Numbered from the whole stretch's first letter, positions 17,652-33,841 are shown. The stretch is DNA of 64,000 bases, filler included, from Hyphochytrium catenoides (GCA_900088475.1; 10 parts of 10 records of this genome joined end to end with filler, not necessarily neighbours in it); one strand, 5' to 3'. The notes: a model not told the origin generated them from the sequence alone. Numbers and translations are program-made.

Positions 17652-18173
17652 TGCGGAGCGCCGTATGCAGCAGGAGTTGGAGATGTCTCTTCAGGGTACA
17701 TCTGCAAAACAAGTCCCTCCAGGAGCACCTGGCGGTAGGTGTCCCTTTTGCTGGTGTTTAAAGGAGTCTCTCGTACCCTCCATTCAGCGATGATTATCAC
17801 ATTCCTGTTTCCCAATCTCTCAGGGTCAGGCCATCGTCCCAAGAGTGAGTCGCGGCGATCCAAGAGTGATAGGAGGCAGCTCACCCATATAGACAAGGCT
17901 TCTCAGGACAACCTCGTAGGGATTGATCCCGTGACCAACGGTATTTTTTCAAACCTTGCCTTTTCATCTCAACCACCCTCACTTTGCTAAGGCCCTTCTG
18001 TCTTCTCGATTGTCAATTATAATCTAGCTCGGAGTCCAACGCGTGATCAGACCTGGAGCGTCGGCAGTCGACCACATGAAGAAGAGGGGGCAGCAGGGGC
18101 CTACACGGAGAAGAGACCATCATTGGAGGCAGGAGTGAAGCGAGAAGGTGGAAAATGGGAGAGGAAGCAGTAA
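17652..18173 (+). CDS. 3' end of an unknown gene (three exons)
   Basis: Phase-compatible GT-AG exons AERRMQQELEMSLQ...APG|GSGHRPKSESRR...DPVTN|ARSPTRDQ...KWERKQ*. Confidence 0.5.
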
Positions 18174-18671
18174 AATGGGAGCTGCCTTTATGCAGCCCTA
18201 CTGTCAGGAACGCTTTCCCGGTCACAGGTGCCCCACTAACAACTGACAGCTATAGACAAAGGCATGGCACCTCCTGATACCAAGTATGTCCTAGCAATCA
18301 TCGCCCTTCCAGTAAGTGGAAATCGTGGGCACTAGAGCCCTGGCAGTGGTACTAAAGTTAAGCTCACCTGCCCTGTGGACCCGGTCACTAGCTTCTAATT
18401 CGGGACATGCCTACATGCCAGCAATCTGCAGAATGGACTGATCTACGCTAATTTGCAGACTGGAGAGCATTTTGTTTGTTGCGTCAAAGGAGAGCGGTCC
18501 ATGTCATAGCAAGAGGCTAAACCTTATGAGTAGCCATGGTTTTAAAATAGTTAAGGATGCTTCAAAAAGTGAGGCTGAAAATCGTATTAGAGGGCATCCA
18601 GCCTGCTTCTTAGGTCGCCTCTAAGGCTAACATAAATACGCTTAAAATCCCACCACAGACGGCCCCTTCCT

Positions 18672-21600
18672 TCATACCAGCAGGTCCGCAGGAACTTCGG
18701 GTGCGTCCAGCTCCATACAATCGAAAAAGCTTGGAATGGCAATGCGGACGCCTCCTGCTCTCCCTCTTTCAGATCCATGAAGTGTCCCTTTTGCACCCTG
18801 GCCACATACTCCTCCCACAATATCCCACTCCCCGATTCCTAAGGCCAGCGGAGGCTTGCGAGAGAGTCCACCCGGTCGTCTGCCCTTACCACTTTCAAGA
18901 AGAAGGGCATCTGAAGGCATTGGGTTAAAAAGGTACACGGAGCTTGCACTGGGAAAGAATAAACAATGTGACTATGATCCCTTCGAACTAAAACGGGTTA
19001 CCCCTCTTTCTACCTTACCTTCGACCACAGCGGACTGTAGGATAAATGAAGAGCCGCCTCCCCCACCTCCCGCAATTCCTAAAGGCAGTCTCTGAGTCAA
19101 AAACGATCAAAATTGCGGAGCGTGCAGTTACAAAGAGTTATCAGGCAGAAAGAGAGAGGACAGACGGAGGCAAGGGATCCCCACAAAAGACAGAGAGATA
19201 GGGAAGTAATGAGCCCATGACAATAGCTGCACCATTAGCCTTACCGGGAAATGTGCCACCGCCTCCACCTCCATAATATCCCCCACCTCCACCTCCGCCG
19301 AACTCCGAGCCATTTCCACCTAGAAGCATGTGGGAAAAGGTATGCTTAGATAAGGAAGATGACTATATACGGGCCAGTGAGTGAGAGAAAGAGAGACAGC
19401 GAGAGAAAGGAGAGAGAAGAAAGAGAGAAAGGAAAAGAAGAAAGATGGAAAGAATGAGGAAGGCAAAGAATGAAGTGAAGGCAAGACAAAGGTGGGCTGC
19501 TCCTACCCCACGAGGGACGAGAGCTATCTTAGGTGAGGGCAATCACGAGAGAGAGGGTCTTGCTGGGAGAACGTCGAGGGACCAATAGACGTAAAACCAG
19601 CGACATAAAGGCCAAGAAGTAGAGTGTGGTATGTGACAACGGTTCATCCTTATTGCTCACCTTGCAGCGCCGTCCCTGCGGTCCCGGGAAATCCTGCCAC
19701 ATGTTCCCCGCCGCAGATTCCTGCCTCGCCTCCTACCTCTTGGCTTCCAGTCTTTCCGTTAATGGGATCAGGTCTAGCGGGGACTTCAGCGCCTCCGAGA
19801 CCATTGCGAGAGCCTCCCCCACCTCCTCCAGCCGCGATAAGAACAGTCTTTGTAGGCAAATTGAACACAGCGCACAGAGAGGGATGAGAGGAGAGTGAGC
19901 TTTCCTAACCTGTCCACGCGTCTCATCCCTTCCACGTCTATCTTTCTTCTGCACGTATGGCTGTTTTCTTCTATTTTTTGCCCTTTTCCTGCTGTGAACA
20001 TATCCAGACACACTGCTGGAAGCTTGCCCCTCCGCTAGAGAATCTGATGGCAAGTATCTTCAGTCTAATAATGATTCATGCGTCTCTATCCGGCTCCGTT
20101 CTTGTTCTACAAGCGAGAGTTCCCTCCTCTTTCTTACCTCAGGCCCAAATGCGGTGTTTCTGGTTATAGAGGTGTAGCCTCCTCCTCCGCCGCAACCCCA
20201 TTCTTTGTTTCCTGCGTATCCTGATCCTCCTCCTGGCTCACCCCCAGGAGACATTCCACACTAGCCAGGTAAAAGATGTTAGGTGAGGATCCCTTAGCCA
20301 TTTGTGATGTGCACACCCTACATATCAGACGGCTCCATTTCATAGCAACAGTACCTGATCTACCATAAGCGCCTCCGCTAAATCTGGAGCCTGGACCATT
20401 GTCCCTGGAATGCCTTCGCTCCCTCCCTCACCAACGGTTAATATGAGTTCCTAAGGACACTCGAGGTCTTAGTCCTACCGTGTCCTCATCATCTAGCAAT
20501 TCGTTTTTCCTCCTTCAGAGATCTAGCTGCCCTCACTTACCTCCCCAGGTGTGACTGCTAGCACGGTCTCCACGAACGCTCCCCCACCCCCATGCCCACA
20601 CTTCTGCCCCCGTAGAAACCCTGAACCGCCTCCAGCTCCCCATGCCTGAACTTTGACCTGGAGCAAAGGGTATTCGAAAGTAATGAACGCAAACTTAAGT
20701 GAAGATCTAGTGAGGGATGAAGGACCGAGGGAACAAGTGAAGAATTATGCTATTGAGGCTTGAAGAGACCACCATTACTAAACAGGATGCGTTCAGTACC
20801 ATGCGGACGCCTTTGGCAACCCTGTACGAATGCTTCCCGGACACAGCATAGATGAGAACTCCGGAATCTGAGCCAATCACACAAGGAGAAGTGATGAAGA
20901 GACAAGGTCTAGGTTAGACTATCGCTTTACTGAATGGAACTTTCACAGCCTAGTATCAATGACCCTCGAACATGGTGGGGAGAGGTTGACTGTAAGAGAA
21001 GTATCAGGGAGGAAGGAGAACAATAAAAGGAAGGACGAAGACTTGTAAGTCAGTTACTGAGGGAAAGGATAATAAAACGAGGCGGACTGGTAGGATACCG
21101 GAGAGACGAAAGATAGAGAAGACGTTATGCCTTACCTTGTACGTGTTTCTGCCTATGTCTTCTTCTCTCCTTGGCCTGAAAGGTGGCAATGCACCCAGGC
21201 CAGGAACACTTCAGCACACGATTGGGACAATTTTCTGCCTCATGTTCCATTCTCTCTTGTTCTAGCTCAAGGATCCTATGAGCACCGCCTTTGAAGGTCT
21301 GCAGGAACATCGAAAACCTCAGAGCAGTTAGCCACTCTCAAGCTAAGATACCAAGCACAACGGCTTAACGGAAAGAAATGGAGAGAAGGCACGGTGCCTT
21401 CAATGGTAGGGAGAAAGCTTGGAAGAATAGGTAGAGTAGAAAACAGTGCACATAATAGTCTAACTGTATAAGGATAGATAGATCCCTTCTAGCTCTCACC
21501 TGCCCACATCCTAGCCTGCAGACTCTGTCTGGAACAGGTCTCTTCGTACAGGTTTGCTTCTTGTGATACTCCAAATCTTCTTCTGCCACATAGTCTCCAC

Positions 21601-24600
21601 AGTCTTGAGTACAGCGCACTAACCTGGTGAGTCGGTTCAAAAGAGTTCCACCGGGTCTTAGCCAGAAATCGATACAAGGAAAGGAGAGGGCCAACAAATG
21701 ACGGAGAAGAGGGTAGACATATGGAGAGCTCTGAAGTCTCTACCCCGGCCGAGAGGGTCTGGATGTACCTTCTTTTGCATTCTTCCTCCTCGTGGTAGAG
21801 GAGGTACACCTGAGGAGGGTTGTCTTCTCGGCTCCTATCATTGGGCCCAAAGTAGGGTGACAGCCACTCTTCCTCTCGGTAGGTGGTACGGCAGCCCAAT
21901 GGACAGGCAACAAGTCTGCATGTGAAGGGTTACAAAATAGGAGCAAGAAAATAGTTGGAGAGGCAATAGATGCGATGGACTAGCAAGTCAACCTCAAAAC
22001 TTGATGAGTTTGCGAACGCTGTGGTGACAGCCAAACCCAACGACCTTGAGGCAACTGAGTCACGCAGATAGGGGGCGGGTACAGTTCACCCAAAGAAATA
22101 AATGAATAAAGAGAAGTAGGCCGCAAACAAAATGTATATCTGAGGACGGGAGCGAGTGAAGGCAGCATAGGAAGAGAGAGAAAAAGAACGAGAGATCGTC
22201 CAACAGAGAGAAAATAGAGAGAAAAATTAGAGAGAAGCAGAGAAAGGACCAACACAGCTACTCGTATCAACCTTAGTGGGCAGCTCTGCTGGAGGTGCTC
22301 ATCCAGGTCATTGCCCTGCTTTATCCACAGACGACATCCCCAATCACAAAGGAAGAAACCCCGGGAGGCCCGGACTTCAGCATTCTCAAGAAGTCTGACC
22401 AGACGCCTTCTTTCGTTGGTGCGGGGGCTATGAATATGAAACCCGATCGTGACGGACAGCAGAAGCGGAAGGGAAGAAGAGGAACACGGGAAGGAGGTAT
22501 CAGGTGTGAAAGGTTGTCTGTTAGACCTTCTGGCTTCATAAATGATTTGCAGGGTCAGAGCAACGAACCTGCTGCCTTTATCTTCTATTGCAGAGATTTC
22601 CCTTTCTATATCCTCAGCCTAAGCGACCAGATCAGCATAAGACAAAGTCAACAGGTTGACGTAGAACAAATGATTAAGTATGAAGTCACCTGAAGTCTTT
22701 GCAAGTTAACGAGTTCAGCGCTGCTTTTATACGATTTAAGCCCTCCTCTTCTCTCTATCTGCACGAGAGAGAGAAGAGCGGTCCCAGTTTTAGCAGCTTC
22801 GGCGGCTGCTTCTTCCTCTATTAACTTTCTCTTCATCCTCATCGCATTCAGCTCAATGCTCTCCTCTCCTTCTTGTGCCTGTGAAGCTCTTGACGTCTAT
22901 CTTAGTTCATCTTCCTTTTGAGAGCGCCACGGAGGAGTACAAGAAGGACTTAAGGTCGCAAAATGGTACGGATGGGCTAAGAGTAGGATGGACGGAAGAG
23001 TACCTTCTCCTAGCTGCCACTGTTGCAGACAAAAGACGAAGCCGTGCTTGCTCCTCGGTCCTCTGTAGCTCCGCCTCCTTGCTTCGTTGCCGCATTCTCT
23101 CTTCCTTTGCTCGCTTAGCCCTGATGGCCTTGGTCCACTCCTCTTCTTCTCGCAGGTGTTGCACATCCGCCACGGTTTTTAGCTTCGATTTCATCTCATT
23201 GACCTTGACCTTCATAAGTGGGGTGTGGATACAGACATTAGTACCGAGTAGCAGAAGGTTGGCTTCCATTATGGGGTAAGACTGATACATTGAAGGCAAT
23301 GACAGAGCAATATGCGGATAAAAACGCTGGGAAGAGAAATTATGGCTAACTTCTAAGGGCTTGTCTTCCTCCAAGGCCTCCTCGGGTGGGTTGAAGCTGT
23401 GTCGGTGCTCTCCGGTCCTAAAGTTATAGTAAAAGAGCAACTCCGTCACCGGGTCTCGATAGAGCAGCCAGCCAGCACGGAACTTCGGCATAGACGTGCG
23501 GGAGGAAGGGGTAAAAGGTGACTGAGATAGGAAGGTTGGAGGGAAAAAAAGGAATACGCCGCCCATAGAAAATGGACGGCGCCGTAACAGCAAAGATAAC
23601 TTTTTGAGGCAGAATGTAGCTTGAGCACAAGGCACATCAGTCGGAAGCTTAGTCTAACAAGAGCTTGGATTTAGGTAGCTGAAACGAGCAAAGCCGAGAG
23701 CCAAACCCCAATCCGGAGAGATGGGCACGCAGAGAAAGATGAAGGTGGGAGAGACTTGACAAAGGTGGGGAGGAAGCGACTCTTACCTTGTCCTCTTGGT
23801 TCGATCTCCGCACGATGACGCTGAGCGCTTGCCTTTCTTCTTCAGCGGGTAGAAGTTCTGCGGGTTTATTCCACTGGCAGATCTCAGTCTGACGATTATA
23901 GTAGAATCTACTCTTGGAGAGGACAAAAACGTATTCCTCCCACTGACCAAGAAGGCAAAAGCGGTGGGAGTGCAAAGAGAGATGCGTTAACCCGTGAGAA
24001 TAGAGTTCCTGGTATTCTAGCTCATTCTCCTTCCTAGCAGGACCTATACACTCCATTACCTCCTTGAGTCTTCTCACAAAGGTTCCTAGACTGCCATAAG
24101 ACCTGAAGCTTGCCCACTGACTCTGGGATAACTTTTGGCTCTCTTCAAAGAGCTCTCGTATCAATTCATCCTGCAAACCATCAAGTTCCGTCTTTTCGAT
24201 TGGCTGCTCTTGAGGACTGTTCAATAGGTTTAATAGCCGGGACACAAAGGCCGCAACAAACGGGAAACCGGGCAAACAGGTCAGAGTTATAAATCGGCAA
24301 ACAGGCTGAAAGGAACAGCAAGAGGAATGGTTTTCGTGGGGTGAGAGGGACAAGGACGAGCGAAGCTACTCGGAGACAGTGAGACTTCAGATTTCAACAC
24401 CAGGCACGGTACGAGGGGTTGTCAATGCCTTCTTTGGAACATTCCATCTTTATCTACATACTTAGCTGCATCCACTTCAGGTCTGTTATTTGTCATTTCT
24501 GCTTTCCCATCCTCTTCTCTATTCCTTGTGCCTTCGGCTTTCTCAATCGCCGTTTTCTCTTCCGGGTGATGCCCCTCATTCTCTCTAACACTCTGCTTCT

Positions 24601-27600
24601 TCAGTACTGGCAGCGAAATTTTTGGTCGCAATTCAGTTGGCTTCTCCCATTGACTGACGCCCGTACGCTTGTTATAATAGAACTTGCGTCCTGTGCTGAG
24701 GTCCAGATACTGCTGCCAGCTCTCTGTACCACAAGACAAGCGGCAGGTTAGGGCAGTCGTGTGCAACCAAAAACAAGGAAAATGCTGGTGGTAGTAAGTA
24801 TCATGCATTAGTAGGCTTCTGATTGGAGATCTCGTGCAAGCAGAGGTCCCTAAAACGGTTGCCCTTAGTGATGCAAGGAATGAGCGGGCTAGAGAGAGTG
24901 AGGCACGATCTGAATCTTAAACCTACGGCTCTTCACCTGTGGAGTTGTTCAGCTTCGCTCTTCGCCGTAGTAGGGCCCATGCTCGCCGACTGAAGCCAAG
25001 AGACATGCGGACATGAAGGGAAGATGATAAAAAATCAAAGCCGGCTACTTATCATCCCCAACTCTCTTATCTACATGTGCATCTATAGACTTACACTTCA
25101 TCTAGAGTTTCCACCGCTTGGGGCCGAGGGTGCCAGACTATTTCATCAGTGAGTTTGTTCATGTAGAACCTGTTCCAGGTATCATCATCCACGTATTCCT
25201 AGGTAAAGGCAACAGAGCGTCACATCCTAGCTGTCTCTGAGGATCCAACGGTCACTGCGTCAAAATACCTCCCACTGCTCTAGCGTCCGATTAAGGTCTG
25301 CTCTTTTGATGATGTCGCGTAAGCCAGACTCAGAATATTCGGCCTTGGTAGTGATAGTTAGTAGTTAGCGGACAGATGTACGAACCTCGAGAGACAAGCG
25401 TAGATAAGCAAAAGCGAGAGGTATTCATTACTAATGGTCCTTAGAAAGAGGCCTGCTAAGAGGGGTAGGAGAACTTCTTTCTTACTCTCTTTGCGCGATC
25501 CATTGCCAAGTTCCATAACTCAATATCACGCTCCCGGCTCCGTCTAAGAGCATTTGCCCTGCACCACGGGAAGGGTGACGCAAGGGTAAGATCAACTGCC
25601 TGGCGGGACAAGAAGGATGCAAGTCGTGTTCCGGGAAGGGGGGGTATTGGGAGGCCGAGGGGTCAGTGCAAATGAACAACATACTCTGCAGCTTCTCTTC
25701 TGTCCGCTCGCCTTTCAGCTATCATCTCTTCGCGAAGCCCACTGCCACTGCGGAATAAGGAGCACAAAGCGCGGTGAGATAGACTCTTGCAAAGGAAAGA
25801 TTCGAAAGATAGGCCCAAAGATAAAGATACAGATGCGAGGCACTTTGGGTGCAATGAGAGATATCCGGTAGACAGGGCAATCGACTTTCCAGCGCTCAAC
25901 CGGATTTCGTAGAGAAAGGAAAAGTGTGAGGATGTGTTGCCTAGCTTACGTAGGAGTTCCTGGCCTATTTTGCGAGACGACGAGGTAGTCAAAGGGTGTC
26001 TTCTTCAGGTTGTCTAAGGGCACCGGATCCACGCCATGATCATCAAGTAGAGCGCGGATTGTGTCCTAAAGAGTAGCAGATGTCCTCAGATATGAGAGCC
26101 TAGTGAGATTTAGAACTGCAAGAATGCTGGACCACGATAGTAGAGGAAAAGCACGCATAAAGATTTATAAGTGTACTCCGTGCGGACAAAAACGATGATG
26201 TCGTCCCAAACCTCATGACTGCAGGTCAGATTCTCTTCACAGGCAACATGCAACGGAGTCTGGCCCCGTTTGTTTCTATAGTTGGGATAGGCCTCGAGGA
26301 ACGCTTTATGTAGGATTGTCTGGCAATTGACAAGGAGTCAGACAGACAGCTCGGATACAGGAAATAAGAGCTCCTTCCTTTGCTACCATCGTCTGTTCTT
26401 CTCTCCCTACCTGGAGAGACTCTACCGACTCTATAGTTTGGATGAAGATATTTTTGTCGGCCTGTGCCACCCAGAAGCCGCTCTTGGAATTTGTATCATA
26501 GCGCGATAACACATATTTAACCAAATCTTTTTGAGGACGAGGGACGAGACAGCGCTTATCTGGCAAGACATTCTGAAAGGCCAAGTGAATGTTAGAGGTT
26601 ATCAACACAGAGACACCAACTTGATACGAAGGATTGAATAGTGAAGAGTGATGCAATATCGGTCAGAGCGCCAACCGGTAGAGTGTAGAGAAGAAAAAAG
26701 AGATAGCAGCAGCTTGACAGATCATTAGAGTAGGGCATTGCTCGGTGGCTCCATTTCACAGAGTTTACTGTCACACCTGATACACAGTCTCGACTGCTTC
26801 CTGCACCCACTCCTTCCTGAAGTGCGGCTTGTCTATATCAGTTAAGTACTTTGCTTGTAACACTAGGAACATGCTGGCCGTGACATCCCGAAACGGCTTC
26901 TCTCCCACCGCCAGCTGGTTGGTCAAGACCTTGCGGATCTGATTCTTATGGGCATTCAAGATCTTCTCCACCAGCTGCCAAAAAGTGGTAAGTAAAGGAG
27001 TTGAGGGAAGTTAACAGCCTCTAGAAAAGGAGAACTGGAAATGTAGAGGGTGTCAAAGGCTTGAGGTTAGACTGTCTATAGTTGCGCCGTCATAGAGGAA
27101 AACTGTGGAAATATTTTCGAAAAAAGATCCGCTAAATATCAGAGAAACATACTCTAGGAAGCAGGAACGGCCCACTAAGTTAAGTCGTAATATAGAGAGG
27201 CCAAGGCAAGACAGCTGAGCAGCAAGACAAACCCTAAGAAATGGCACAACACTAGGGTTAGAACCTCCATACCTGCGCGTGACCTCTTTTGGCTGCGGTA
27301 TGCAGAAGCGTGTTACCAGCGGAGTCCTCTAAGTAGAGGTTGAGACCATGCTTGATAAGTACGATGATGGTCTGGAGGACGTGTGTGAGGCAGTCTATCT
27401 CCCTTCTCGTCAAGGCTGCAGTTCGTAGCACTCACATTAAAATGTCCGTGATACGCAGCAATGTGCCCTGCGGTTCGACCCAGAGTGTTCTGACGATTTA
27501 CAGCGGCTCCCTAAGGGTTGACAATCAGTGACCGCCCACACTGTCGACCTTACGTCTAGTTCCTATTGCTTTCCTCTATTCCTCATTCTAAACGCGCTCC

Positions 27601-29889
27601 TAAGTAGCCGCCGTAACCTCGCTTTTCTCTGGCCGCTCATGAAATAGTAGGGCTCAGTTACCTTACTGATCAGATAATCAGTCACGCGATAGTGTCCCTC
27701 CCTGCAAGACAGCTCTAAAGCATTCAAATCCCGACCGTCTGGCCCTAGCTTCAGCTCATTCGGGTCTTGTCCGCCGCATATATAGAGAGAAATCTAGCAT
27801 TGCAGTGAGAGATTTATGGAATTGTTTATGGGGACGAGATGACGAGCCTTATTGATGATCAACGGAAAGGCCTATCTCGACCAACCTCTTCAAGTGAGCC
27901 ACTTTCGGCGGCTACCCAGAAGTCCCTTGCCTTCCTAATGCTGTCAGACTCTTTGGTTGTTCTCGCTTGCTTGAGGATTTCTTGCTTTAGAAAGGGCAGG
28001 TGATGGAGGTTTACGCCTCCCCATCTTTCCAAACTCTAAACGAAGTACCCATTTAGAAGATGTATTAGAGACAACCGAGGCCAACGAAGAGAAAAAGTAG
28101 GAAGGAGGTTCGCAGCGAGGGAGCAAGGGAGAGAGAACAAAGTGAACCTCGACTACCTCCACAATAGCTTCTCTTTCCATCCCGGCCTTAGCCTGGTATT
28201 GTATCCATTCCATCCACTGTGAGGGCAGACGAGATTGGAAGCCTGCTGGCTTCAGATCAGGGTGCTTTTCCATAATAGCCGAGATAGTTGCCGAATAGAT
28301 GTCAATATGTCAGCAGAACTTCTTCAGATAGGTTTATTTCTTTGAATACCTGCTCTATTAGCCGATCGAGAGACAATTTGCAAGCGATCCTTTGAATCAG
28401 CTGGGTATTCTTTCCTGGCACGAATCCCTATGAAATGAGACGTCGGACGCTACATAAGTGGTGCGTTGGGGACGTTGTCCAACTGCCACGTCAGCCCATC
28501 GCGCACCGTCTCGTTTTGGGTCCACTTAATGATTCCCAATCTTCCCACTCGCGGCGTTTTGCTCAACTATAAGGAAAGTGTGGGGCGCACCTTGAGGACT
28601 AGCTTTCCTAGAACTTCCTCTGGCCTAGCTCCATTCTTCAGATTCTGAAAGACCCAAGACTCCCACTCTGCGGGAATTACTCCTGGGTCCACCTTGATAC
28701 CTGGCAGAAGTGCCTGTCTCCTGTCTGTCAAAAATGTCGTATGCTAGCTAGTAGACTTTTCATGGTTTCATGGCACCTTTAGTCTGTCCAGCGCGGCCAG
28801 CGCGGCCTTGAATTTTGCTTCTCTAGTGGTCTTCCCAATGCCGTCAAAGTAGCGCTCCTGGGTATATGGAAGACCGTCAGTCACGCGTGCAAGGTCGGCT
28901 TCCCCTACAAAGAACCTTTGCAGCGCTTAAAGGGCATGCCATAATTCTTATCGTCCATGCGGTAGCTTTAAAGTCTATCGAGGTCTTTCCGCATGTCCCT
29001 TCCCATTCAAGCTCTTCGTTATATGGACCCAATGCTTCAAACCTACCTGATGAACAGCTTGAACTTTATTGTCTTTCATCTCATGCCAGATGCCGCTGAC
29101 GTATGCTCTAACTACAAAGTGTTTCTGCTGGGAGCTGGTCCCTTTTCTTTCTTCAAAGAGCTGGAACCAGACCTTCAAATCCCGTTTTTCTGTATTGCGA
29201 AAGTCAGCGGTGCATTCATCGCTCATACTTATGACTAGTCACCTGTCTCGGCTTGTAGAATGGCCACCGGACTGTTGTTCAGGCTCTTTACTACCGCCTG
29301 CACGTCTCCAAAGCGAGGATCTCCCTGGCGCGCCTTCACGAGCATCTGCAAGGCAGAGGGACAGCCGTATGTGGAAACGGACAGGAGGAAGCCGCTTGCC
29401 TCTTACAAGTACGTACCACTATGAACTCTTGGAAATCAATGGAGCCATTGCCATTGGTATCAATCTCAGCGACCAATTCTGAGAGTCGTTTTGTAGTCAT
29501 CTCCACCCCAAGAGACTCAAATATCTTCGCAAGCTGAGGGGACGGCAAACAGGCACCTGGTTGTGAGTGGATGCCCAAGTTTGATGGATGCAGACTCGGT
29601 GTAAAGCACCTTACCTCTTCATAATCAATCTCGCCGCTTTGATCAGCGTCATACTCCGAGAAGAGTGCCTTGATCTGTGCCGGCAGCATCATGATCCTTA
29701 GAGCAAGGGACTTTCTAATTTGAGATGACTAAAGCTTACCTCCTCATGTTGTGAGGGTGTTATCTGATTTCGATAGTCCAGGGGAATATGCCAACGATCA
29801 TTGTCAGGGGCGGGATCCTTGGCCTCTGACGGTGGAGAGCCTTTAGGCTCACTTTGTTCAATATCATTGCCCTCTTTCCCAGCTGCCAT
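18672..29889 (-). CDS. Large multidomain protein of about 40 exons: 2 EF-hands, dsRBD-like motif, ankyrin repeats, 4 WW domains, coiled region, TRAF-type Zn fingers, Gly-rich domain
   Basis: EF loops DADQSGEIDYEE and DTNGNGSIDFQE; dsRBD tail FDGIGKTTREAKFKAALAALDRL; ANK motifs GRTAGHIAAYHGH, GNTLLHTAAKRGH, GQTPLHVAC; WW WQQYLDLSTGRKFYYNKRTGVSQWEKP; Zn fingers CDWGC..H..CPLRLVACPLGC and CPNRVLKCSWPGC; VKVQAWGAGGGSG, VLIAAGGGGGGS. Exons splice in phase end to end. Confidence 0.8.
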
Positions 29890-30201
29890 CCTATATGGTA
29901 AGCGGCCAGGCTTCGCAGCCCGTGGATTATTGCAATGTCATTTCCTTCCTCGGCTTTCTTCGAAGCTTAATGTTGTACATGGGATAACTGAAGCACTCTC
30001 CTTTCCTTGATCAAAAGCTTTTGACGACAGATCATCGTCCTTCCTGACAGAGTAGGGAAGGAATCACTGTCTTTCAAGGAGACAACCTCGGTCAGACAAA
30101 ACCCTGAAGGAATAGTGCCCTCTGGCCTGACCGAGATCTCTCTTCAACCTGCTCCGCTCCAGCACGTGCGACACTGCTTATTACCCCGCTACCCTGTGCG
30201 G

Positions 30202-31147
30202 ATGAGGGTGAAGATCGAAAGGTCAACCAGCACACAGGAACGATCCCATCAACTCTCCAGTAACGCAAAAACCAGAGATCTGATAATCCTTGTGATTATC
30301 AACAACGATGTGAAACGACCTGAGCTGGCATCGCTGGTAGAAAAGAACTTCCAGGAGATGCAAAAGGCGTAAGAGTCTGATTCTTGGGCGCTGGGTGCCT
30401 CTGCATCCTCGTCCCAGCCTTCTTCCCGTCTAGGCCCAGCATTTGAGCAGAGATGCGATTCTTGGAGATAGCACACTCCGGAGTCTTTGGGAGAATAGGA
30501 CTTTGGGGAAGCCAGGAGACCTAACCGGAGAATGGCGGTTTGCGAAGAGTGTAGAATAGTCTGACTGTCTCCAAATCTGCTTAGATAGCTGCTGAGACTG
30601 GATCTACTAACTGCTTCCACACAAGGTAGTCTAAGAATAGATGACTAGCTGTTCTGCTGTAATCTCACAATAGCAATCATGGCAGGCGCTTTAAATAGCT
30701 GAGGGTGCAGTCCCTGCGTTGACGAGACTACGTTAAGCTACGAACGCTGGCCTTTCTGGCTCCTTACGGATCGTTTGTTATGGACTAACTTGAACCTCCC
30801 GGGCCAGTGACGAGACGCTCTCAATTTTGTGCGTAACTCAAGAAGCCCTCGATCCCATCTACAAGGCCATTAGTTACCGATACACACCGATGCAGCCCAG
30901 AAGGATGCACCACCGATATCTGGATGAAGGAGCAACTTGTGCCCGTCGCGCATCCCAGGGATGCATTCCAGTATCCTGCAAGCCTGTCATGAGGGTGGGT
31001 ACCAATGACTTTTATTGGGCAAAGCAGCCTGTATTGTCTCAGGTTTCTATCTTCATCTGGTGTTGTAAGCTGAATGAGGCTTTAACCATCTGTAGGCTGC
31101 AAGGGGCTCAAGAATACGCCTCAACACGGTCTTTAATCGGGCTTGAC
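30202..31147 (+). CDS. Possible small three-exon hypothetical gene
   Basis: MRVKIER...NFQEMQKA (phase-2 donor gtaag) fits the phase-2 exon DETLSILCVTQEALDPIYK...PVLSQ, then AARGSRIRLNTVFNRA*; no recognisable domain. Confidence 0.3.
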
Positions 31148-31413
31148 GCGGTCAAGGGTTTGTAGCTTGCAAATATCTCTCTCTGCAATTGTAGCTGACA
31201 AGCTTAGTGCCACTCAAAGACAACTTCCACTCTGGGCTGGCATCTCAAAGAGATGTCACAGGAGCCTACGGCTAATGCTTCTCCTTCTGCTTGTAGGACA
31301 TCCTTCGATTAGCTCATAATGTAAATCTTCTCTAGCAACTATAGCTGCCAACACTTGGCAGCAGCCACAGACGATTTCGATTCTGGGCTGGTGGGCAGTA
31401 CGTAATGGTCTGA

Positions 31414-32545
31414 CTAGGGTTGATCTTTCTTCTTCTTCTTCTTCTTCTTCAACCCTGCAAACTTGCCTAAGCCCTCCTGCACAAAGTATTTAGAAAAGTG
31501 CCTTGTTGACCGACGCACCCAGTACGTCTACTTACCTCGTCTGAAGCCGCCTTATCAGGCTCTACGTCAGCTGATTCAGAAGCTGATGCTCCTGCAGTAT
31601 CCTCCACAGCTGTGGCAGCCGCTTCATCTCCTGTAGGTACCGCGCCTTCCGAATCTTCCACCGAAAGGTTGTCTAGCGCACTTGTTGCCGCTGCAGCCCC
31701 TCCGTTCTCAGCCTCGTCGGTTTCCTGTGCTGACTCAGAAGGGGCAGGAGCAGCTTCTTCAGTCGTTTGTTCCTTGCTAGCCTCATCCTGGCAAACGACG
31801 GTTGGTTTAATAGGAACATCTGGTTTACATGGGTCGTGCTGCACTCACATCTGAGTCATTCTCGCTGAAGGTGGCCCAAATATTCTGTGTCTTGATCTTT
31901 GGAGGCTGGGCAACCTCCATAGGCTTATTACCCATACCTCCTAGAGTCGGAAACTGCCTCTCATTGCTGAGCTGAAGCTGGCGTGCCTGCTCTTGTCTTA
32001 GCCGCTCTCGCTCACGCCATCCTAGTGAGGTCACATCAACTTGAGGCTAGGGACGTGTTAGATAGGTTGATGCTTTGGCAACCCCCACGCGAAATACGTA
32101 CAATCTCAGCAGTCTTTTCTGATTCTTTCTTCTTCTTGCCCTGCTGTCTTGCCCAGTGGAAAGCCTTTTTAGCTTCCTCTCTTTGCTGTACGTCCTCATC
32201 GTCGTTATCACTCTGCCGGTTCCTAGATGAAGTGTTAAATATAGGCGGGTCTGTCCTGACAGCACCGAGAAGTGCTTACTCTAAATCAGCAACCACTTTG
32301 CCCGAAGTGCGAATTACACTCTTCTTCTCCTCCACCGTTTCTATCCATCCGTTGTCATCCTTAAGTGCAGTCTTCTTGCGCTGACCTGGACTACCAGGCG
32401 CTGTCAGCGACCTAAAACCCAAAAGGTTAGACGTTCTATCCCAGGATCGCACAATGGTTGCAACGACCGCTTACGTTGGCTTCTTCTTTTTGTCCTTCTT
32501 CTTCTTGAAAAAGGAAGACAAATCCTTCTGCTCTGGTTCTGCCAT
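31414..32545 (-). CDS. CDV3-like low-complexity protein
   Basis: MAEPEQKDLSSFFKKKKDKKKKPT resembles the CDV3 N-terminal FF+basic motif; NERQFPTLGG motif; acidic tail ending GKFAGLKKKKKKKKDQP*; six GT-AG exons. Confidence 0.65.
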
Positions 32546-33123
32546 GCTCTGGTGTTCTTGTTCCAGCTCCAAATAGCGATTGCAACTTCGACAGTGGGAT
32601 ACTTCCAGAGCCAGACAACAGAACAGAGACGCACTCGCCCCCGAAGCTGTTTCCTGGTCTGGCAACAAGGAATGCCAATAATCTTCTTCGAACTTGATTG
32701 TGATTCTTATAGACAGAGGGAGATCTCTCTGGGACATGTGCTCCCATTTCCCATGCTGCGCAGCGGGCGGGTGGCGGCACTTTGGCCGGGGCGGGTAGGC
32801 CATAATGAGGGGCTGGGACGGGCAATTGAAGCAATGCTCATTATTGTCGTATTGCTCTTCTTGTATTCTTGTAACTCTCTGCTTGGTGCTTTGCCAACAC
32901 ACAAGAAAAACATTTTTGGAATATTCTCCGAAGAAAGTCGTAATCTCTCATCTCTCAGATACAGCTTGGTTAGTAGAGCTCCAGGTTTGATGAGTCAATT
33001 GAAGGAAGAGAAGCATCAGGTTCTATCTTTAGTGGTAGGTTTCGCCTTATGCTCTAGCTCTATCAGCAGCAGCAGACAGGACTATCAGCTAGTAGTAGTA
33101 GATCTCGTAGAGGAGAAGAATGG

Positions 33124-33201
33124 GCTGAGACTCTAGTCATTCTCTTCCCTTTGATGAGTTAGCTGAGACTCTAGTCATCCTCTTCCCTTTGATAAGTTAG
33201 C
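33124..33201. repeat. 38-bp tandem duplication
   Basis: gctgagactctagtcat(t/c)ctcttccctttgat(g/a)agtta x2. Confidence 0.9.
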
Positions 33202-33841
33202 GGTGCTTCGGTGCGAGATCTTCCTACAGAGATTGATGGGCACTTGCTCTAGTGGTAGGGTTGGACCAGTAGGAAGGTCGTGCGGGTTTATCAGCACTAG
33301 TGGTTTAGTATATTATCAAGGATAAGTTTATGATCATATGGAGCTGTACCTCCATATACTTCTTCTTTACCCAGGGAAAAGCAGCGATGAAGAGATCAAC
33401 GGTAGAGTGTGATCCTGGCTATGCCCAACCACACTTGACAAGACTCATTTAACGTACTTAGCTAGGAGTTCAGTTAACTCCCAGTAACTGTTCTCATATT
33501 TGGCGCACACCGCTGGCGGAGATGGCCGGTCTAAAAGTAGTCATCAGTTCTTGGCGAAAGAGAGCGATCTGCACCAAATAAGAGGAAGTTTATACCCTGG
33601 GCCGTGAACGTCCGTTGAGGACATCTAGGATGGATCGAAATATCCAATCATGAGGCACCCGTAGTAACCTCCACTCACTCGATACAGAATCGACGACCCC
33701 ACCAAGAGGTACAGAGCATCTCAAACCACTAAACACTTTGCNNNNNNNNNNNNNNNNNNNNNNNNNNNNNNNNNNNNNNNNNNNNTTAATTAATTAANNN
33801 NNNNNNNNNNNNNNNNNNNNNNNNNNNNNNNNNNNNNNNNN

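What the first reader, a model, noticed from the sequence alone, without database searches (positions are those of the whole stretch)
18672..29889. One ~40-exon gene joins EF-hand, dsRBD, ankyrin, WW, TRAF-Zn finger and Gly-rich modules
Seen: the ORF track shows only fragments, but hand splicing links GT-AG exons in phase from the ATG at 29889 to the TGA at 18672, giving roughly 1,500 aa (estimate). The order is 2 EF-hands, dsRBD-like motif, two W..W helical repeats, about 4-5 ankyrin repeats, 4 WW domains, a charged coiled region, about 4-5 TRAF-type Zn fingers, and a Gly-rich domain of the ALK/LTK-extracellular type. Known: each module is a binding or sensing unit, and I see no catalytic domain. 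Inference: a Ca2+-regulated RNA/protein scaffold with an architecture I do not recognise. The weakest junction is near 22890-23000, which needs an AAG acceptor.
Basis: partly seen in the sequence, partly recalled or inferred. Interest (0 to 1): 0.8.

Follow-up and report, generated by a model that had tools for sequence, protein, structure and literature searches.

The report
One 39-exon stramenopile scaffold gene

Summary
On the minus strand, 39 exons run from the ATG at 29889 to the TGA at 18672-18674. They are joined by 38 in-phase GT-AG introns of 53-375 nt and give a 5,154-nt CDS (1,717 aa) with no internal stop.

- EF-hand pair
- dsRBD-like domain
- two W..W three-helix repeats
- about 6 ankyrin repeats
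- 4 WW domains
- charged linker
- 4-5 TRAF-type zinc fingers
- ALK/LTK-type glycine-rich domain (GRD)

The one-gene reading is strongly supported. MAST-4-like metagenome contigs carry the whole architecture as single uninterrupted ORFs of 2,552-3,170 aa. Phytophthora nicotianae PPTG_14573 (1,730 aa) matches 26 of the 39 exons in order, from residue 29 to 1728. A profile of nine full-length relatives hits 30 exons and no intron.

The architecture is therefore not new to databases. It is a stramenopile-wide family labelled 'hypothetical' or mis-named automatically, and I found no paper on it. No catalytic domain, signal peptide or membrane span was seen.

The most likely role is a cytosolic, Ca2+-sensitive multi-adaptor scaffold. 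That is an inference. RNA binding is doubtful, because the nearest structural matches include protein-binding dsRBDs.

The parts
18672..29889 (-). Whole CDS: 39 exons, 38 GT-AG introns, 5,154 nt, 1,717 aa, ATG 29889, TGA 18672-18674
   Evidence: Hand tracing. Phase and stop check. Collinear profile hits on 30 exons and none in introns.
29740..29889 (-). Exon 1: start codon and acidic N-terminus without a signal peptide
   Evidence: First ATG after an in-frame stop. Residues 33-50 match P. nicotianae PPTG_14573 residues 29-46 at 50% identity. No hydrophobic N-terminus in relatives.
29243..29674 (-). EF-hand pair (exons 2, 3 and start of 4). Both loops have canonical Ca2+ ligands (DxDxSG..E and DxNxNG..E).
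   Evidence: Pfam EF-hand_1 50 bits and EF-hand_7 50.9 bits on fragment 29339-29692. The exiting helix continues across intron 3.
28777..29345 (-). dsRBD-like domain (exons 4-6: 29345-29243, 29189-29047, 28857-28777)
   Evidence: Exon 6 alone gives weak dsrm, DSRM_2 and Dicer_dsRBD hits (E 0.04-0.1, below cut-off). The ortholog region folds as alpha-beta-beta-beta-alpha, and all top PDB matches are dsRBDs (Foldseek; VIA Z 11.4, rmsd 1.9 over 73 of 75 residues). Profile hits on E4-E6.
27886..28713 (-). Two W..W three-helix repeats (exons 7-8 and 9-10), core motif IPxxWxxW...N...G......L..LV.KGF.P..N
   Evidence: This is among the best-conserved parts of the family (exon 7 i-E 3e-11; invariant columns). 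AlphaFold model of the ortholog has pLDDT 79 and shows 2 x 3 helices. No convincing PDB relative (Z <= 5.1).
25950..27960 (-). Ankyrin repeat block (end of exon 10 to exon 17), about 6 repeats with a roughly 110-aa insert encoded by exons 14-15
   Evidence: Pfam Ank_5, Ank_4 and Ank_2 on 27261-27431 (just below cut-offs). Strong Ank hits at the same position in orthologs. Repeats run across exon junctions.
25486..25747 (-). Charged helical linker (exons 18, 19)
   Evidence: In-phase GTAAGC/GTATGT donors and good acceptors. No homology support.
23351..25343 (-). Four WW domains: WW1 is split between exons 20 and 21; WW2 is in exon 22; WW3 is in exon 23; WW4 in exon 24 is degenerate (second Trp replaced)
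   Evidence: Pfam WW 43.3 bits (24425-24808) and 16 bits (23652-24353). 165 WW-protein hits with exon 23. Profile hits on E21-E24.
22569..23209 (-). Highly charged, probably helical or coiled linker (exons 25-27)
   Evidence: Composition read. Two alternative in-frame solutions at the E25/E26 junction. No homology support, but orthologs have a continuous ORF across the same interval.
21136..22427 (-). TRAF-type zinc-finger array (exons 28-31), 4-5 Cys/His units. Introns 28 and 29 sit at equivalent positions (phase 2, before 'LV.C').
   Evidence: Pfam zf-TRAF 20.1 and 17.2 bits on fragments (below the 27-bit cut-off). Profile hits on E28, E30 and E31, i-E 4e-7 to 2e-12. 45-52% identity to oomycete orthologs.
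18672..20867 (-). ALK/LTK-type glycine-rich domain (exons 32-39), running to within a few residues of the C-terminus
   Evidence: No Pfam hit on single exons. The same region of orthologs hits PF12810 at 28-52 bits against a 24.5-bit cut-off. Profile hits on E32-E39, i-E down to 7e-16, and contiguous with the TRAF exons in profile coordinates.

Best explanation
The span is a single protein-coding gene of an intron-rich stramenopile. It has 39 exons and encodes 1,717 aa. It is the ortholog of an unnamed, uncharacterised family found in MAST-4 flagellates, oomycetes (for example Phytophthora nicotianae PPTG_14573) and ochrophyte algae.

The product has no enzyme domain, signal peptide or membrane span. 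It is a chain of binding and sensing modules: an EF-hand pair with canonical Ca2+ loops, a dsRBD-fold domain, two W..W three-helix repeats, about 6 ankyrin repeats, 4 WW domains, a charged helical linker, 4-5 TRAF-type zinc fingers and a C-terminal ALK/LTK-type glycine-rich domain.

The most likely mode of action is a cytosolic multi-adaptor scaffold. In this reading the WW array and ankyrin block would gather proline-motif and other partners, the invariably paired TRAF-finger/GRD end would act as a further docking or self-association platform, and the N-terminal EF-hands would make the assembly respond to Ca2+.

Shown: the gene structure, the domain content and the orthology. Inferred: cytosolic location (about 0.75), scaffold role (about 0.5), Ca2+ control (about 0.6), RNA binding by the dsRBD (about 0.3).
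For: - Gene model: 38 in-phase GT-AG junctions and no internal stop.
- Domains cross exon junctions: the EF-hand helix across E3/E4, ankyrin repeats across E10-E17, WW1 across E20/E21, TRAF fingers across E28-E31, and TRAF into GRD through E31/E32/E33.
- P0151 (2,569 aa, L003) and P0160 (2,708 aa, L004) are confirmed as single uninterrupted ORFs on their contigs and carry EF-hand, Ank, WW, zf-TRAF and PF12810 in the same order. P0169, P0170 and P0171 (2,552-3,170 aa) list the same Pfam families.
- A profile of nine full-length relatives hits 30 of 39 exons collinearly and nothing in introns.
- P. nicotianae XP_008909735.1 (1,730 aa) is matched by 26 exons spanning residues 29-1728. Aphanomyces euteiches KAH9155544.1 (1,610 aa) is matched by 22 exons.
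- The named relatives that align over the TRAF+GRD region are all stramenopiles.
- Pfam on window fragments: EF-hand 50 bits, WW 43 bits.
- dsRBD fold in the ortholog: Z 11.4.
- No Kyte-Doolittle peak in any window exon, and none outside the ankyrin helices in relatives; no hydrophobic N-terminus.
Against: - There are no transcript data for this organism, so the model is not confirmed by RNA.
- The linker exons 18-20 and 25-27 have no homology support.
- Some database entries hold only TRAF+GRD (Ectocarpus CBJ48844.1, 757 aa; P. palmivora, 519 aa). In contig L005 the locus is called as three consecutive ORFs. Stand-alone or split forms therefore cannot be excluded everywhere.
- Function is inferred from domain content only. 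No member of the family has been studied in the papers searched.
- The GRD profile finds no solved ALK or LTK chain by sequence.
- The GRD is extracellular in ALK and LTK, so an intracellular role has no precedent to lean on.
Confidence: 0.85

Rival explanations
1. There are two or three adjacent genes on the same strand, fused by hand splicing. An N-terminal EF-hand/dsRBD/ankyrin/WW gene would end near exons 25-27, and a separate TRAF-finger/GRD gene would follow.
For: - Reading through the exon 25 donor meets a stop at 22907-22909, and ATG codons follow in exon 26.
- Reading through the exon 31 donor meets a stop at 21125-21127.
- In L005 the gene caller gives three ORFs of 1,500, 447 and 839 aa.
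- Database entries of 500-900 aa hold only TRAF+GRD.
- P0123 and P0166-P0168 (about 1,500 aa) end after the WW array.
Against: - Two independent contigs carry everything as confirmed uninterrupted ORFs, and three more full-length relatives list the same Pfam families.
- Oomycete models of 1,610-1,730 aa span all the modules.
- The L005 ORFs are only about 100-140 nt apart on one strand, as expected for a prokaryote-style caller stopping at short introns.
- Contig L001, which carries P0123, is 99.3% identical to L004 for 4.6 kb and then diverges inside the WW repeats. This looks like an assembly break.
- Exon 32 has no upstream ATG in its open frame. The phase-1 junction E31/E32 and the phase-0 junction E32/E33 fit the family profile without a gap.
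Confidence: 0.07
2. It is one gene, but it works chiefly as an RNA-binding or RNP-organising protein. The dsRBD would bind double-stranded RNA and the other modules would recruit factors to it.
For: - The dsRBD fold is well supported.
- The start of helix alpha-2 keeps a basic T-T-R-E/D-A-K motif in the window and the family.
- RNA-bound dsRBDs such as RNase III, Staufen dsRBD3-4 and Loqs are among the matches.
Against: - The top-ranked match is TARBP2 dsRBD3 in its Dicer complex (Z 11.4). Staufen dsRBD5 bound to Miranda (Z 10.6) and DRB7.2:DRB4 also rank high. These are protein-protein cases, but rows within one Z unit count as tied.
- No GPxH-type beta1-beta2 loop is seen in the family alignment.
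- Pfam dsrm is below its cut-off on the exon and was not reported for full-length orthologs at E <= 0.01.
- There is only one dsRBD in about 1,700 residues.
Confidence: 0.3
3. It is one gene, but a decaying or unexpressed copy (a pseudogene) of the family.
For: None directly. WW4 is degenerate, and the WW array is shorter than in the MAST-4 relatives (4 repeats against 8 or more).
Against: - The frame stays open through 39 exons and 5,154 nt, with usable splice sites at every junction.
- The length is nearly the same as the P. nicotianae ortholog (1,717 against 1,730 aa).
- Residues that are invariant in the family are kept in the W..W repeats and the GRD.
Confidence: 0.03

Closest known systems
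Phytophthora nicotianae INRA-310 PPTG_14573 (XP_008909735.1, UniRef100_W2PV21, 1,730 aa). Likewise Aphanomyces euteiches KAH9155544.1 and the MAST-4 proteins (EukProt 'Stramenopile-MAST_4_protein_1990').
   Same: The same collinear architecture from the EF-hand pair to the C-terminal GRD. Nearly the same length. 26 of 39 window exons match in order, at 30-74% identity per exon.
   Different: Oomycete and MAST-4 genes are intron-poor or intronless, while the window gene has 38 introns. MAST-4 versions have many more WW repeats (2,552-3,170 aa). None is characterised. The sources' names ('hypothetical protein', 'receptor protein-tyrosine kinase', 'Troponin C') are automatic.
ALK/LTK receptor tyrosine kinases (extracellular glycine-rich domain, Pfam PF12810)
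   Same: The orthologs' C-terminal domain scores above the Pfam cut-off for PF12810, matching model positions 11-203 of 243.
   Different: There is no kinase domain, membrane span or signal peptide, so the GRD is predicted to be intracellular. No similarity to solved ALK or LTK chains was detectable by profile-sequence search. Whether a TNF-like subdomain is present was not tested.
TRAF adaptor proteins (RING, TRAF zinc fingers, coiled coil, MATH)
   Same: An array of TRAF-type Cys/His fingers lies next to a coiled, charged segment, and the protein has adaptor character. The Ectocarpus relative is named 'similar to TNF receptor associated factor 4'.
   Different: No RING or MATH/TRAF-C domain was found in any relative scanned. 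The fingers are followed by a GRD instead.
Multi-WW adaptor proteins of protists (the 165 hits)
   Same: Tandem WW domains separated by charged linkers.
   Different: Those hits share only the WW part. Of the 150 listed, only P0123 and P0046, which are family members, also matched the EF-hand, dsRBD or W..W exons.

Membership tests
Stramenopile EF-hand/dsRBD/W..W/ANK/WW/TRAF-zf/GRD family (unnamed; e.g. PPTG_14573, P0151, P0160) | Collinear match over the whole length, from the N-terminal EF-hands to the C-terminal end of the GRD | tested here: met
   Profile of nine full-length members: 30 exons hit in order, model positions 66 to 2538 of 2541. PPTG_14573 residues 29-1728 of 1730 are covered by exons 1-39.
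Stramenopile EF-hand/dsRBD/W..W/ANK/WW/TRAF-zf/GRD family (unnamed; e.g. PPTG_14573, P0151, P0160) | The two W..W repeats with their invariant residues (IP..W..W, N, G, KGF.P..N) | tested here: met
   Exons 7-10 carry them. Exon 7 gives i-E 3e-11 against the family profile. The invariant columns are listed.
Stramenopile EF-hand/dsRBD/W..W/ANK/WW/TRAF-zf/GRD family (unnamed; e.g. PPTG_14573, P0151, P0160) | All modules in one polypeptide | tested here: inconclusive
   Shown for relatives by uninterrupted ORFs. For the window it is inferred from in-phase splicing and contiguous profile coordinates. There are no transcript data.
Pfam PF12810 ALK_LTK_GRD | Score above the Pfam gathering cut-off (24.5 bits) | tested here: inconclusive
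   The window domain is split over 8 exons, and single exons give no hit even at E <= 10. Orthologs score 28-52 bits, and window exons 32-39 match their profile. The joined protein was not searched, by rule.
Pfam PF12810 ALK_LTK_GRD | Polyglycine-II helix lattice as in the solved ALK and LTK structures | not tested
The profile-sequence search of the PDB found nothing.
ALK/LTK receptor tyrosine kinases | Tyrosine kinase domain and a transmembrane segment | tested here: not met
   No kinase family appears in any Pfam scan. No TM-like hydrophobic segment lies outside the ankyrin helices.
dsRBD (Pfam PF00035 dsrm) | alpha-beta-beta-beta-alpha fold | tested here: met
   Met for the ortholog P0160 residues 95-400: VIA Z 11.4, rmsd 1.9 A, 73 of 75 residues against TARBP2 dsRBD3, with 49 chains at Z >= 8 and every listed row at that level a dsRBD. 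Window exons 4-6 align to the same profile positions.
dsRBD (Pfam PF00035 dsrm) | Pfam score above cut-off (23 bits), and the canonical RNA-contact motifs (GPxH loop, KKxAK) | tested here: not met
   Exon 6 scores 15 bits. No GPxH is seen in the family alignment, and the start of helix alpha-2 reads T-T-R-E/D-A-K. RNA binding itself cannot be tested here.
EF-hand pair (PF13499 / PF00036) | Score above cut-off, and canonical 12-residue Ca2+ loops | tested here: met
   EF-hand_1 scores 50 bits (cut-off 25.4) and EF-hand_7 scores 50.9 bits (cut-off 30). Both loops have D at position 1, D or N at 3, S or N at 5, G at 6, D at 9 and E at 12.
WW domain (PF00397) | Score above cut-off (26.9 bits) | tested here: met
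   43.3 bits for WW2. WW3 scores 16 bits on its fragment. WW1 is split by an intron. WW4 is degenerate.
TRAF family adaptors | C-terminal MATH/TRAF-C domain, and usually an N-terminal RING | tested here: not met
   Only zf-TRAF was found (17-31 bits). No MATH or RING appears in the window fragments or the relatives.

The most novel reading that the evidence does not exclude
The invariably paired TRAF-finger/GRD end could be a stramenopile-specific intracellular docking or self-assembly device. In this reading a polyglycine-II lattice would work inside the cell rather than as an extracellular receptor domain. The EF-hands would switch it with Ca2+, making the protein a lineage-wide signalling hub, for example in Ca2+-driven behaviour of flagellate cells or zoospores. 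It would also be an informative relative of the ALK/LTK ligand-binding domain.
Probability: 0.15. Interest if true: 0.6.

Novelty: new member of a known kind. Interest (0 to 1): 0.38.

Why it matters
The result shows that a difficult 39-exon hand-spliced model is essentially right, and it corrects the model at three places. It also defines a conserved, unstudied protein family spread across stramenopiles, including oomycete plant pathogens, brown algae, chrysophytes and uncultured MAST-4 flagellates.

The family places an ALK/LTK-type glycine-rich domain in what looks like a cytosolic protein, always directly after TRAF-type zinc fingers. That is a useful lead on what this domain does outside animal receptor kinases.

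It also exposes misleading automatic names on the orthologs: 'receptor protein-tyrosine kinase', 'Troponin C' and 'similar to TRAF4'. As a single-locus finding it is a solid annotation, not a surprise.

Tried and rejected
- Ab initio dynamic-programming gene models with a bootstrapped codon table and simple splice scores skipped or invented exons. Donors have little consensus beyond AG|GT: GTRAG occurs 23 times on the gene strand against 30 on the other. I traced the exons by hand instead.
I redid it with coordinates only.
- The word search with exon 23 (143 aa) found nothing. The length window excludes full-length relatives.
- The single large representative search, also with exon 23, returned only WW matches. 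It paid off only after all 40 exon peptides were compared locally with its 150 hits, which picked out P0123 and P0046. An N-terminal or GRD exon would have been a better query.
- Pfam on single GRD exons, W..W exons and TRAF exons at E <= 10 found nothing, apart from weak dsrm hits on exon 6.
- The GRD family profile against PDB sequences gave no hit at E <= 1.
- Fold searches for the W..W repeats found nothing convincing (PDB Z <= 5.1, Foldseek E > 1). The Atlas top row, a bacterial 2OG-Fe(II) oxygenase cluster at TM 0.38, is only a lead.
- Rfam and tRNA scans of the piece found nothing.
- Three paper searches found no study of the family.
- Pfam on ORF fragments of the upstream region 30.2-33.7 kb was not informative.
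- The organism was not identified. No database protein is near-identical; the best per-exon identities are 45-75%, to oomycetes.
- The spliced 1,717-aa protein was never searched, folded or saved as a joined sequence, by rule. All searches used single exons by reference or database orthologs. Exons were concatenated once in memory, only to count bases.

Full report
**What is there.** The piece 17652-33741 is eukaryotic DNA of about 50% G+C. It shows only short ORF fragments. Pfam scans of minus-strand fragments gave:
- an EF-hand pair (50 bits, 29339-29692)
- ankyrin (27261-27431)
- WW (43 bits in 24425-24808; weak in 23652-24353)
- TRAF-type zinc fingers (21368-21697 and 21128-21310, below cut-off)
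- nothing for the Gly-rich fragments

**Gene model.** Automatic models built with a bootstrapped codon table were unreliable. Donors share little beyond AG|GT: GTRAG occurs 23 times on the gene strand against 30 on the other. I therefore traced the gene by hand through three-frame displays. I then checked every junction by script for GT, AG, phase and split-codon stops.

The final model has these features:
- 39 exons of 50-430 nt
- 38 GT-AG introns of 53-375 nt (median 142)
- 27 introns in phase 0
- a CDS of 5,154 nt, or 1,717 aa
- ATG at 29889, the first after an in-frame stop
- TGA at 18672-18674
- no internal stop

Of the 38 donors, 27 follow an exonic AG, and 33 acceptors have C or T at -3. 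Introns are 58% pyrimidine on the coding strand, against 42% for exons. Several domains run across junctions: the EF-hand exit helix (E3/E4), ankyrin repeats (E10-E17), WW1 (E20/E21) and the TRAF fingers (E28-E31, with introns 28 and 29 at equivalent positions).

**Relatives.** A word search with the longest exon (exon 23, 143 aa) found nothing. The one large representative search with the same exon gave 165 hits, all on its WW part. I compared all the exon peptides locally with those 150 listed proteins. Two of them also matched the EF-hand, dsRBD-like and W..W exons in order: P0123 also matched WW exons, and P0046 an ankyrin exon.

Their 90% clusters hold longer members, P0151/P0156 (2,569 aa) and P0160 (2,708 aa). 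These carry the EF-hand pair, Ank, many WW domains and PF12810 ALK_LTK_GRD (46-52 bits, cut-off 24.5), plus zf-TRAF in P0160. They match window exons from E2 to the last exon in order. On their contigs they are single uninterrupted ORFs: L003 10001-17710 and L004 451-8577.

Further members are:
- P0169, P0170 and P0171/P0172 (2,552-3,195 aa), in a cluster holding EukProt entries named Stramenopile-MAST_4
- P. nicotianae PPTG_14573, XP_008909735.1 (1,730 aa)
- Aphanomyces euteiches KAH9155544.1 (1,610 aa)
- P. ramorum, Pythium insidiosum and Thraustotheca clavata
- Ectocarpus, Chrysoparadoxa, Ochromonas and Chromulina

A profile of nine full-length members was searched against every stop-to-stop segment of the minus strand. 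It hit 30 of the 39 exons in collinear order, covering model positions 66-2538 of 2541, and hit nothing in introns. i-E-values went down to 7e-16. The coordinates run on from one exon to the next. In particular, E31 ends at position 2225, E32 covers 2226-2248 and E33 starts at 2247, so the TRAF fingers and the GRD are joined exactly as in the uninterrupted ORFs. PPTG_14573 is matched by 26 exons spanning residues 29 to 1728. No database protein is near-identical, so the source organism is an unsampled, intron-rich stramenopile.

**Corrections from homology.**
1. The family alignment showed that my first E5/E6 junction left about 22 extra residues. The canonical pair CAG|GTAGGT (exon 5 ends at 29047) and CCCAG| (exon 6 starts at 28857) fits exactly.
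2. The 51-nt 'intron' at 18839-18889 in my first model aligns residue for residue with the relatives (PGG..RKPP.A.G.GEWD), so it is coding.
3. The AAG-acceptor solution is also in frame.

**Modules.**
- *EF-hands.* Both loops have canonical Ca2+ ligands.
- *dsRBD.* Exon 6 alone gives weak dsrm-type hits. An AlphaFold model of P0160 residues 95-400, built on a 10-sequence alignment, has mean pLDDT 69, with most of the ordered blocks at 73-85. It shows the alpha-beta-beta-beta-alpha fold. All top PDB matches are dsRBDs. The best is TARBP2 dsRBD3 (Z 11.4, rmsd 1.9 A, 73 of 75 residues). Staufen dsRBD5 bound to Miranda and the DRB7.2:DRB4 complex also rank high; these are protein-binding cases. 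The family shows no GPxH loop, so RNA binding is uncertain.
- *W..W repeats.* These are two three-helix units (pLDDT 79) with no convincing solved relative. A weak Atlas match to a bacterial 2OG-Fe(II) oxygenase cluster is only a lead.
- *GRD.* Membership of PF12810 is shown for the orthologs and carried over to the window through the profile. A profile search of PDB sequences found no ALK or LTK chain.
- *Location.* No hydrophobic N-terminus and no TM-like segment outside the ankyrin helices was found. The protein, including its GRD, is therefore predicted to be cytosolic.

**One gene or several.**

Evidence for a split:
- Read-through stops follow exons 25 and 31.
- L005 is called as three ORFs.
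- Some short database entries hold only TRAF+GRD.

Evidence against a split:
- Uninterrupted ORFs are confirmed on two independent contigs, and three more full-length relatives carry the same Pfam families.
- The oomycete models of 1,610-1,730 aa span all the modules.
- The L005 ORFs are only 100-140 nt apart on one strand.
- L001 is 99.3% identical to L004 for 4.6 kb and then breaks inside the WW repeats.

I put two or more genes at about 0.07.

**Function.** No paper on the family was found, and the database names are 'hypothetical' or automatic. From the domain content I take it for a cytosolic, Ca2+-sensitive multi-adaptor. The WW array and the ankyrin block would gather partners, and the conserved TRAF-finger/GRD end would be a further docking or self-association platform. 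This is an inference.

**Limits.** The spliced protein was not searched or folded as a whole, by rule. Everything was done exon by exon, by reference, or with database orthologs. There are no transcript data. Linker exons 18-20 and 25-27 rest on splice signals only.

**Verdict.** The gene is a new member of an existing but uncharacterised family, of moderate interest.

Noticed in passing
L001 18-4645 against L004 185-4838: The two MAST-4-like metagenome contigs are 99.3% identical for 4.6 kb and then diverge inside the WW-repeat region. In L001 the ORF stops at 1,485 aa and overlaps a convergent NDK7-like gene. In L004 it runs on to 2,708 aa. This is probably an assembly break at the repeats, though it could be a structural variant.
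   Followed up: partly
L005 6596-15201: A related contig has the locus called as three same-strand ORFs of 1,500, 447 and 839 aa, separated by about 140 and 100 nt. These are most likely two short introns that a prokaryote-style gene caller could not bridge. MBOAT lies downstream here and in L004, so synteny is conserved.
   Followed up: partly
P0176 (EukProt Stramenopile-MAST_4_protein_1990, 3,037 aa), last ~500 residues: Its C-terminal part does not align with the family's TRAF/GRD region (alignment A3). It looks like a fused or chimeric gene model.
   Followed up: no
Names of orthologs: UniRef names several orthologs 'receptor protein-tyrosine kinase' although the two scanned here show no kinase domain. 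Others are called 'Troponin C, skeletal muscle', 'Calmodulin protein' or 'similar to TNF receptor associated factor 4'. These look like automatic names taken from a single domain.
   Followed up: partly
window 30200-33741, mostly minus strand: More ORF fragments (acidic, Ser/Ala-rich and Arg/Glu-rich) suggest another intron-rich gene upstream on the same strand. Pfam gave nothing useful.
   Followed up: partly
window introns 28 (21916-22271) and 29 (21624-21768): Two successive TRAF fingers are interrupted at the same position and phase (phase 2, completing an Arg codon before 'LV.C'). This is consistent with exon duplication of a finger unit.
   Followed up: no
model m94b56fb05448 (W..W repeats of P0160 210-345): The nearest ESM Atlas shape match is a bacterial 2OG-Fe(II) oxygenase cluster (PF13640), with TM 0.38 over 74 aligned residues. 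The match is weak. From memory, similar W..W helical modules precede some bacterial oxygenase and cupin domains; this was not tested.
   Followed up: no
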